Shown one piece after another: positions 8,571 through 9,472 of a stretch of 64,000 nt of DNA. Numbering within the stretch: position 1 is the first letter of the stretch; the number at the start of each line of letters is the position of its first letter. The stretch lies in NCBI RefSeq assembly GCF_006345805.1, contig NC_042998.1, positions 38,998,001-39,062,000 of the forward strand. The letters are read 5' to 3'. Made by a program: the position numbers and the translations under genes. The notes beneath the pieces were generated by a model that ran no database searches, was not told the origin of the DNA, and worked only from the letters and a program-made list of their open reading frames with translations. Source of the stretch: Octopus sinensis (lineage: Eukaryota).

Positions 8571-8660
8571 TTGGAGATGTTTCGGGAAGCTAAATAACAG
8601 TACCACTCGTCCTAAACTGGGACTGCCATGTTATGTTGGCAAATAATCTTTACTCTAGAT

Positions 8661-8786
8661 AATCTTTACTCGAGCGACACGGCCGCCCGCGCGTCGCTAA
8701 TCCCTCGCAAGAGGGAGGCGCGTGCGCGTTGCGGTCGCGGGATTCCCCGCCCGAAAAGCCGCCCGCTGCCGCCGGTCAAAAAAAAA
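8661..8786 (+). pseudogene. Retroposed copy of an unidentified GC-rich structured RNA
   Basis: 106-nt body (8672-8777, 80/106 G+C by hand count), A11 run (8778-8788), direct repeat AATCTTTACTCTAGAT at 8645-8660 and 8787-8802. Confidence 0.85.
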
Positions 8787-9472
8787 AATCTTTACTCTAG
8801 ATACTGTTACTGAATGTCTCTCGTTGAAAGATTTACAAATAGAAATTTTCTATTGTATTAGATCAGTGACTGTCACTTTGAAAATTATATATTTCGAACA
8901 AGAATTTAGCAGCGCCCTCTCTAGCCGAACAGTTATTATCTGCTGGTGAAGGGAAATAACCCAGAAATCGCGATACACAGATTTTGTTTTGAGCTGAGTG
9001 GGGGTGCTAGATTCCCTTGTTCGAAAATATAAGGCCGTGGATAGAGTGTTCTATAACCAGCTGGAGACGATGCTGAAGCGAGTAAAAGAATGTGTGCGCG
9101 CGCGCGCGTGCGTGATGTATGTATGTATGTATATACACATGCGCATACGAGTACACATCGCATAAGTATTTAGAGAAATAGATTAGACAGACAGATGCAT
9201 AAATATACACACACACACACATATATACATTGATTATATTTAAAGACATAAATAGATTATATGTAAATTCCTTCCACTAGCCGTTTCTCACGGTGTTTGC
9301 ACGACAAAAGCCTGAAAGGATTTGCTGCTAAAGTGACAAAAGGATTAACTATATTGTTCCATAATTCATTCATCCCTCAAAAATCAACACATGACTATTT
9401 TTCTGTGCAGAGCGATTATAATGCACCATAAATGAAAATACCCCTCTTTCGTTTTCTCTCTCACTCTGTCTA

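What the first reader, a model, noticed from the sequence alone, without database searches (positions are those of the whole stretch)
8645..8802. Retrocopy of an unidentified 75%-GC structured RNA with A-tail and perfect 16-bp TSD
Seen: 106 nt at about 75% GC in strongly AT-rich surroundings, an A11 tail and TSD AATCTTTACTCTAGAT. It folds by eye into stacked hairpins: AGCGAC/GTCGCT; TCCCTC-GCAA-GAGGGA (GNRA tetraloop); GCGGG-ATTC-CCCGC. It matches none of the SINE families in this window. Established: TSD plus A-tail is the signature of LINE-mediated target-primed reverse transcription (TPRT). Inference: it is a fossil of an abundant structured RNA. Candidates are an oligoadenylated rRNA processing intermediate (nt 8676-8698 align 17/23 with my recollection of the vertebrate 5.8S 3' end GCCACGCCTGTCTGAGCGTCGCT, hinting at 5.8S+ITS2), an rRNA expansion segment, an unannotated cephalopod ncRNA, or a GC-rich viral/viroid-like RNA.
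Basis: partly seen in the sequence, partly recalled or inferred. Interest (0 to 1): 0.75.

Follow-up and report, generated by a model that had tools for sequence, protein, structure and literature searches.

The report
Orphan A-tailed retrocopy of GC-rich RNA
A 106-base, 75%-GC piece of RNA was reverse-transcribed and pasted once into this AT-rich, octopus-like genome by retrotransposon machinery; the insertion is real, but its parent RNA could not be identified and the proposed 5.8S/ITS2 origin is not supported.

Summary
Window 8672-8777 is 106 nt at 75.5% GC, the most GC-rich island in a window that averages 37% GC. It ends in an A11 run and is flanked by a perfect direct repeat. That repeat is 17 bp (AATCTTTACTCTAGATA), not 16.

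These are the hallmarks of poly(A)-primed, LINE-type target-primed reverse transcription. It is the only such event in the window; the local SINEs and the one LINE 3' end I read have no A-tail.

The parent RNA remains unknown:
- Rfam gave no match, even with truncated matches allowed.
- There is no tRNA-like head and no second copy in the window.
- Six-frame peptide searches found no protein.
- Searches of metagenome, prokaryote, viral, plasmid and phage DNA gave no real match.
- No host genome or rDNA was available.

The 5.8S hint (17/23) is a post-hoc match whose mismatches fall in a stretch that is, from my recollection, invariant in animals.

The claim of structure is only partly supported. 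Two hairpins are robust and one is disfavoured. The overall fold energy is ordinary for this base composition (z = -1.6).

Verdict: an ordinary kind of event, an orphan retropseudogene, with an unresolved source. Interest is modest.

The parts
8645..8661 (+). Target-site duplication, upstream copy (AATCTTTACTCTAGATA, 17 bp)
   Evidence: Read. The exact repeat was found by script. The pattern search found 2 exact copies, against 0.06 expected even with 2 mismatches allowed.
8662..8671 (+). Extra partial copy of the start of the target (ATCTTTACTC; 11 nt if the shared A at 8661 is counted) at the 5' junction
   Evidence: Read; blastn-short matches 8661-8671 to 8787-8797. It is either filler templated from the target during 5'-end joining, or the remnant of a pre-existing 16-bp tandem duplication (in which case the true TSD is 11 bp). 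This choice is inference.
8672..8777 (+). Retrocopied body: 106 nt, 75.5% GC, CpG o/e 1.39, parent RNA unknown
   Evidence: No Rfam family. No tRNA. No protein or DNA relative.
8701..8716 (+). Hairpin TCCCTC-GCAA-GAGGGA (6 bp, GNRA-type loop)
   Evidence: Pair probabilities 0.95-1.0; present in the MFE structure.
8737..8750 (+). Hairpin GCGGG-ATTC-CCCGC (5 bp)
   Evidence: Pair probabilities 0.78-0.84. The same 20-mer also occurs by chance in a few GC-rich bacterial contigs.
8778..8786 (+). A-tail: 9 unambiguous A's. The run is A11 (8778-8788); its last two A's are also the first two bases of the downstream repeat copy.
   Evidence: Read. No AATAAA or ATTAAA lies in the 40 nt before it.
8787..8803 (+). 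Target-site duplication, downstream copy (17 bp)

Best explanation
This is a single, fairly young retrocopy, a fossil with no predicted function of its own.

How it formed (inferred from the anatomy; nothing biochemical was tested):
1. An RNA whose last 106 nt are 75% GC carried a short A-tail.
2. A LINE-encoded endonuclease/reverse transcriptase of the poly(A)-using type captured it in trans.
3. The bottom strand was nicked at ...CAAAT|AATC..., leaving a 3' ...ATT end that can pair with the A-tail.
4. That end primed the cDNA.
5. The top strand was cut 17 bp downstream, which produced the 17-bp duplication.
6. The 5' end was joined untidily, leaving a 10-11 nt templated copy of the target.

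No AAUAAA-type signal precedes the tail. The tail was therefore probably not made by the normal mRNA cleavage/polyadenylation route. It was either added by a surveillance-type oligoadenylation (TRAMP/PAPD5-like, which tags structured nuclear RNAs stalled in exosome decay), or it is an internal A-run of a longer transcript.

The parent is unidentified. My ranking is a judgement, not a test result: a non-conserved part of the host rDNA transcript (spacer or expansion segment) about 0.3; the extreme 3' end of a 5'-truncated, low-copy A-tailed retroposon about 0.3; another host transcript about 0.2; an unannotated structured ncRNA about 0.1; an exogenous RNA a few percent.
For: Shown by the sequence:
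- A perfect 17-bp direct repeat flanks a compositionally foreign body that ends in A11.
- The repeat begins at a T|AA step, and the last A's of the tail overlap it.
- The repeats and the A-run carry no substitutions, and CpG o/e is 1.39, so decay is limited.
- There is no polyadenylation hexamer in the last 40 nt.
- It is the only A-run among 34 A/T runs of 8 or more in the window that has a flanking repeat fitting a short insertion. The window's tRNA-derived SINEs and a LINE 3' end have no A-tail. It is therefore not a copy of the local repeat families.

From the literature: LINE-1 retrotransposes mRNAs, tRNAs, Y RNAs, snRNAs, snoRNAs and rRNAs, including 28S rRNA pseudogenes (bioRxiv 10.1101/2025.02.02.635956, read).
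Against: - No parent sequence was found, so 'retrocopy' rests on junction anatomy alone.
- No empty allelic or orthologous site could be fetched. Four window ORFs, two next to the site and two elsewhere in the window, are not on record, and the flanks are unique in the window.
- The nick site GATT|AT is only a loose fit to the L1 TTTT|AA preference.
- No poly(A)-type LINE was identified in the window. The two LINE fragments seen are an RT C-terminus with a non-A tail and a 5' part with an EEP endonuclease.
- The A-run is short (9-11).
- The extra partial target copy needs either an added step or a pre-existing tandem duplication.
Confidence: 0.8

Rival explanations
1. 5'-truncated 3'-extended 5.8S rRNA (7S-type precursor): the first ~27 nt are the 5.8S 3' end and the rest is ITS2, oligoadenylated and retrocopied.
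For: Only 1 of 5000 shuffles of the body matches that 23-mer as well. From established knowledge, 3'-extended 5.8S species are classic oligoadenylated exosome substrates.
Against: There is no RF00002 (5.8S) match at E<=10, even with the stretch starting exactly at 8672 so that 5'-truncated matches are allowed. Five of the six mismatches cluster in the CCUGUCUGAG stretch, which from my own knowledge is near-invariant in animals, and all are to G or C. That is the wrong direction and too much change for a copy with undamaged repeats. The 23-mer was picked post hoc from a large mental library.
Confidence: 0.04
2. A fragment of a non-conserved part of the host rDNA transcript (5' ETS, ITS1/2, 3' ETS, IGS transcript or a 28S/18S expansion segment), tagged with a short A-tail by nuclear surveillance and then retrocopied.
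For: The extreme GC content and CpG richness in a 37%-GC genome are typical of rDNA spacers and expansion segments (established knowledge). There is no poly(A) signal and the tail is short. The MFE closes the two ends into one domain, as expected for a helix that stalls exonucleases. An internal 9-nt repeat GCCGCCCGC occurs at body positions 11-19 and 87-95, the kind of cryptic simplicity seen in expansion segments (read). rRNA retropseudogenes are known in mammals.
Against: Nothing ties the sequence to rDNA. The mature 3' ends of 28S, 18S, 5.8S and 5S are excluded, since the Rfam core models do not match. End-closing stems appear in 87 of 500 shuffles. The host rDNA was not available.
Confidence: 0.3
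3. The extreme 3' end of a heavily 5'-truncated, A-tailed LINE or SINE-like retroposon of the host: a routine TE insertion.
For: Severe 5' truncation is the norm for LINE copies (established knowledge). The TSD and A-tail fit. The window is full of retroelements.
Against: There is no second copy in 64 kb. The one LINE 3' end read in the window has no A-tail and no similarity to the body. There is no AATAAA before the tail. A 75%-GC 3' UTR would be unusual. There is no tRNA-, 5S- or 7SL-like head. No ORF-derived peptide match was found.
Confidence: 0.3
4. Retrocopy of an unannotated abundant structured host ncRNA, or of an exogenous (viral or viroid-like) GC-rich RNA.
For: There are two stable hairpins, one with a GNRA loop. 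The ends can pair into a closed three-way junction. It matches no known family.
Against: The fold is no better than shuffles (z = -1.6). No covariation data exist. No ribozyme or viral RNA family matched in Rfam. Two exact k-mers found nothing in IMG/VR. No peptide match was found.
Confidence: 0.12
5. Not a retrocopy: an assembly chimera, or DNA filler captured at a double-strand break.
For: The copy is unique and no read-level evidence was available.
Against: A chimera or simple filler would not produce a perfect 17-bp staggered duplication plus an A-run placed exactly at the 3' junction, nor a partial templated target copy at the 5' junction.
Confidence: 0.04

Closest known systems
LINE-1-type processed retropseudogenes of cellular RNAs (mRNA, snRNA, Y RNA, rRNA fragments)
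   Same: A 3' A-run, a 17-bp target-site duplication that starts at a T|AA step, an apparently 5'-truncated or fragmentary body, no promoter, single copy.
   Different: The parent RNA is unknown. There is no polyadenylation signal. The host is an octopod-like mollusc in which the abundant LINEs and SINEs seen in the window do not use A-tails. A partial extra target copy sits at the 5' junction.
Mammalian LSU-rRNA/SSU-rRNA retropseudogenes and 28S/LINE-1 chimeras (bioRxiv 10.1101/2025.02.02.635956)
   Same: A GC-rich fragment of a highly abundant structured RNA, inserted by TPRT with a TSD.
   Different: Here no rRNA core sequence is present (Rfam negative), so membership cannot be claimed. No LINE part is attached.
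Oligoadenylated exosome substrates (TRAMP/PAPD5-tagged pre-rRNA by-products, 7S/5.8S+ITS2 intermediates)
   Same: A short A-tail placed directly at the foot of a stable GC-rich helix, with no AAUAAA.
   Different: This is purely an inference from the DNA copy. No RNA data exist, and the 5.8S end is not recognisable.
Templated filler and microhomology at LINE 5' junctions (alternative or theta-mediated end joining; R2-type 5' junction duplications)
   Same: 10-11 nt copied from the adjacent target, joined through a 1-nt overlap (the A at 8661).
   Different: This cannot be told apart from a pre-existing 16-bp tandem duplication with an 11-bp TSD unless the empty site is seen.

Membership tests
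TPRT retrocopy (LINE-mediated retropseudogene) | 3'-terminal A-run directly abutting the downstream repeat | tested here: met
   A11 at 8778-8788, overlapping the repeat by 2 nt.
TPRT retrocopy (LINE-mediated retropseudogene) | Direct target-site duplication of about 7-20 bp flanking the insert | tested here: met
   A 17-bp exact repeat at 8645-8661 and 8787-8803; far beyond chance.
TPRT retrocopy (LINE-mediated retropseudogene) | First-strand nick at a T-rich/A site able to pair with the tail | tested here: inconclusive
   The bottom strand reads ...AAAGATT|ATTTG. Only TT can pair, a loose fit to TTTT|AA.
TPRT retrocopy (LINE-mediated retropseudogene) | A parent gene or transcript elsewhere | not testable with these tools
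   The host genome is not in any searchable collection. The best TE-protein relatives are only 60-67% identical; the closest named one is from Argonauta hians.
TPRT retrocopy (LINE-mediated retropseudogene) | Empty site with a single target copy in an allele or orthologue | not testable with these tools
   Look-ups of four window ORFs, two adjacent to the site, found nothing on record. There is no paralogous site in the window.
5.8S rRNA + ITS2 | Match to the 5.8S covariance model or conserved 3' end | tested here: not met
   No RF00002 match at E<=10, truncation allowed. The 17/23 match has its mismatches in the conserved CCUGUCUGAG stretch (and reading).
5.8S rRNA + ITS2 | Continuity with the host ITS2 sequence | not testable with these tools
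   No host rDNA was available.
Mature 28S/18S/5S rRNA 3' ends | Match to the Rfam LSU, SSU or 5S models | tested here: not met
   No hits.
rRNA expansion segment or spacer | Identity with the host rDNA unit | not testable with these tools
   Only composition argues for it.
SINE | Pol III head (tRNA, 5S or 7SL-like, A/B boxes) and many copies | tested here: not met
   ARAGORN found none. Rfam found none. No other copy in the window.
mRNA processed pseudogene | AAUAAA/AUUAAA 10-35 nt before the tail; coding or UTR homology | tested here: not met
   No hexamer in the last 40 nt. No peptide homology in six frames.
Self-cleaving ribozyme elements (HDV-like, hammerhead retrozymes) | Match to the ribozyme covariance models or core motifs | tested here: not met
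   No Rfam hit. Threading onto the HDV fold by hand leaves no room for P3 (inference from the sequence).

The most novel reading that the evidence does not exclude
The 106 nt are the only record so far of an abundant, unannotated, GC-rich structured RNA of the cephalopod germ line. It could be a new ncRNA class or a non-retroviral RNA replicon, captured by a poly(A)-dependent LINE activity that is otherwise nearly invisible in this genome.
Probability: 0.1. Interest if true: 0.6.

Novelty: new member of a known kind. Interest (0 to 1): 0.3.

Why it matters
If the parent is identified, the copy would date and document trans-mobilisation of a non-TE RNA by a poly(A)-using reverse transcriptase in an octopod. 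In this window the dominant SINEs and the LINE tail seen are not A-tailed.

If the parent proves to be an rDNA spacer or expansion segment, the copy would preserve the 3' end of an oligoadenylated decay intermediate. That would be indirect evidence that surveillance-tagged nuclear RNAs reach the LINE machinery in the molluscan germ line.

If the parent is simply a rare LINE tail, the finding is routine. On its own the locus has no predicted function.

Tried and rejected
1. Rfam: the whole window at gathering thresholds gave nothing. The 251-nt and the exact 106-nt stretches at E<=10 gave only sub-threshold noise such as M23, a c-di-GMP hairpin and miRNA models.
2. ARAGORN found no tRNA or tmRNA in the window.
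3. Six reading frames of the body, concatenated, were searched against 5.8 billion proteins. Nothing scored at E<=10. The control shows the host's own ORFs are not in that database, so this says little about host rDNA.
4. The 61-aa ORF across the insert was searched against 1.84 billion representatives. It returned one low-complexity junk hit.
5. Exact 22-mer and 20-mer scans of the metagenome, prokaryote-genome and viral collections gave 0 hits for the first. The second gave 6 hits that stop after 20-22 nt, i.e. chance hairpins in GC-rich bacteria.
6. blastn in distant mode against plasmids and phages found nothing.
7. A full-text search of papers for six sub-strings found nothing.
8. An empty-site search through four window ORFs found none on record.
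9. A paralogous empty site was sought. The 2-mismatch match at 33327 is chance, and the flanks are unique.
10. The closed three-way-junction idea was checked: 17% of shuffles also pair their ends.
11. HDV-like threading by hand was rejected.
12. I considered fetching an octopod rDNA unit through spurious rDNA ORFs and dropped the idea.

Full report
**What is there.**
Reading window 8400-9050 gives this order on the + strand:
- left flank ...GTTGGCAAAT
- AATCTTTACTCTAGATA (8645-8661)
- ATCTTTACTC (8662-8671)
- a 106-nt body, GAGCGACACGG...CTGCCGCCGGTC (8672-8777)
- A11 (8778-8788)
- AATCTTTACTCTAGATA again (8787-8803, sharing two A's with the tail)
- right flank CTGTTACTG...

The body is 75.5% GC with CpG o/e 1.39. 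The window is 37.1% GC with CpG o/e 0.73. The body contains the most GC-rich 60-mer of the window: 0.78, against a 99.9th percentile of 0.67.

Shuffles give 0.06 matches even when two mismatches are allowed. A script shows the exact repeat is 17 bp.

The repeat is one base longer.

**Is it structured?**
Only partly.
- The MFE of the + strand is -54.5 kcal/mol, against -48.8 ± 3.5 for dinucleotide shuffles (z = -1.6; 12 of 200 shuffles fold as well).
- The minus strand folds about as well in absolute terms.
- The GCAA-loop hairpin (8701-8716) has pair probabilities near 1.
- The GCGGG/CCCGC hairpin (8737-8750) has about 0.84.
The ensemble prefers to pair body positions 5-12 with 100-106, closing a three-way junction.
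- That closure looks attractive as a discrete domain, but 87 of 500 shuffles also pair their ends, so it is not evidence.
- With no homologues there is no covariation test.

**How it got there.**
A compositionally foreign body, a terminal A-run and a perfect staggered-cut duplication together are the signature of target-primed reverse transcription primed on an A-tail. This is established knowledge for L1-type LINEs. Trans-mobilised cellular RNAs, including rRNA, are reviewed in bioRxiv 10.1101/2025.02.02.635956.

The inferred bottom-strand nick is ...AAAGATT|ATTTG.... Its two terminal T's can pair with the tail, a loose fit to the L1 preference.

The repeats and the A-run carry no substitution and CpGs are not depleted. 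The insertion is therefore not ancient, though about 40 sites bound its age only loosely.

The extra (A)ATCTTTACTC has two explanations that the sequence cannot separate:
- The reverse transcriptase, or a repair polymerase, copied 10-11 nt of the displaced target strand. It then re-annealed through the single A at 8661 before second-strand synthesis. This is templated filler at the 5' junction, with a 17-bp TSD.
- The target already carried a tandem duplication of the 16-mer, and the TSD is only 11 bp.

The event is the only one of its kind in 64 kb. Of 34 A/T runs of 8 or more, no other has a flanking repeat compatible with a short insertion. The two other hits are products of segmental duplication or chance.

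The tRNA-derived SINE copies (17480-17657, 19093-19271, about 50330-50620, all on the minus strand) and the LINE 3' end near 49130 lack A-tails. Whatever enzyme made this copy is therefore not the partner of the dominant repeats here.

**What the RNA was.**
This is the unresolved point.
- No AATAAA or ATTAAA lies in the last 40 nt. This argues against an ordinary mRNA or a canonically polyadenylated LINE transcript. It favours a short non-canonical tail or an internal A-run.
- Rfam finds nothing at gathering thresholds anywhere in the window. In the 251-nt and the exact 106-nt stretches it finds only noise. This excludes the conserved cores and mature 3' ends of 28S, 18S, 5.8S and 5S, as well as snRNAs, SRP, RNase P/MRP, Y and vault RNAs and the known ribozymes.
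- ARAGORN finds no tRNA-like head.
- The body has no relative in the window.
- Peptides from all six frames match nothing in 5.8 billion proteins.
- The 61-aa ORF over the insert matches only one low-complexity protein in 1.84 billion representatives.
- Exact 22- and 20-mers are absent from, or only chance-present in, metagenome, prokaryote and viral contigs.
- blastn against plasmids and phages is empty.
- Full-text search of papers for sub-strings is empty.

The limit of all this is that no cephalopod genome, rDNA or transcriptome could be searched. A control search with the window's LINE RT fragment finds relatives only at 60-67% identity or below. The closest named one is from Argonauta hians. 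This supports an octopod-like host, and it shows that the host's own sequences are not in the protein collection.

**The 5.8S/ITS2 hint.**
The 17/23 match is real, and for that single 23-mer it is rare in shuffles (1 of 5000). But the 23-mer was selected after the fact from a large mental library. Five of its six mismatches fall in CCUGUCUGAG and all are to G or C. From my own knowledge, not tested here, that stretch is near-invariant in animals. A copy with intact repeats cannot have acquired them by decay, and the 5.8S model does not match. I rate this idea at about 4%.

**Ranking of sources (judgement).**
- Non-conserved rDNA transcript (spacer or expansion segment), oligoadenylated by nuclear surveillance: about 0.3. 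It fits the composition, the CpG richness, the internal GCCGCCCGC repeat, the short tail and the lack of a poly(A) signal.
- Extreme 3' end of a rare A-tailed retroposon: about 0.3. It is routine and cannot be excluded without the genome.
- Other host transcript: about 0.2.
- Unannotated structured ncRNA: about 0.1.
- Exogenous RNA: a few percent.
- Artefact or non-RNA filler: about 0.04.

**Verdict.**
This is a genuine, neatly preserved orphan retropseudogene. It is a known kind of event, mildly notable for its host and for its 5'-junction filler, but not shown to derive from a special RNA. One BLASTN against the host genome and rDNA would settle its identity.

Noticed in passing
window 16500-17699 and 18127-19313: A tandem segmental duplication, 98.5% identical over about 1.2 kb. 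Each copy carries a tRNA-derived SINE on the minus strand, with a head of the form GGAGGCGCAATGGCCCAGTGG...GGATCGCGGTTTCGATTCC. A third, diverged SINE copy lies at about 50330-50620. Neither ARAGORN nor Rfam recognises the heads.
   Followed up: partly
window 52691-55169 and 55070-57548: A tandem duplication of about 2.4 kb, 98.1% identical. It contains a LINE reverse-transcriptase fragment (ORFs 54481-54876 and 56869-57264) plus a TA/CA microsatellite. This explains the 20-bp 'TSD' artefact in the A-run survey.
   Followed up: partly
window 59159-60689: The 5' part of a LINE. ORF1 has a weak CCCH zinc-finger hit, and the overlapping ORF2 starts with an EEP endonuclease (Pfam PF03372). The element is cut off by a microsatellite block at about 60.9-61.6 kb, and no RT follows. 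Its clade and tail type were not determined, so I cannot say whether it is the poly(A)-using machinery.
   Followed up: partly
window 48233-49135: A LINE RT C-terminal ORF (257 aa). Its closest database relatives are 60-67% identical; the closest named one is from Argonauta hians. The element ends near 49130 without an A-tail.
   Followed up: partly
window 8332-8565 (minus strand): A 77-aa ORF with a canonical C2H2 spacing (CNLCGCLFRTLSGLKSHFRCH) lies about 80 bp left of the insertion site. It has no Pfam hit and no match to the RT family tested. It is possibly the tail of an old TE into or beside which the retrocopy landed.
   Followed up: partly
window 1598-2401 (minus) and 35252-35668 (+): Remnants of DNA transposons: mariner-like HTH/transposase ORF pieces (judged from the translation by eye) and a weak DDE_3 hit.
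   Followed up: no
window 23600-25600, 7900-8300, 9465-9587 and elsewhere: Very dense TA/CA/TCTA microsatellite arrays generate long spurious Tyr/Ile/Cys-rich ORFs of up to 429 aa. Long ORFs here should not be read as genes.
   Followed up: no
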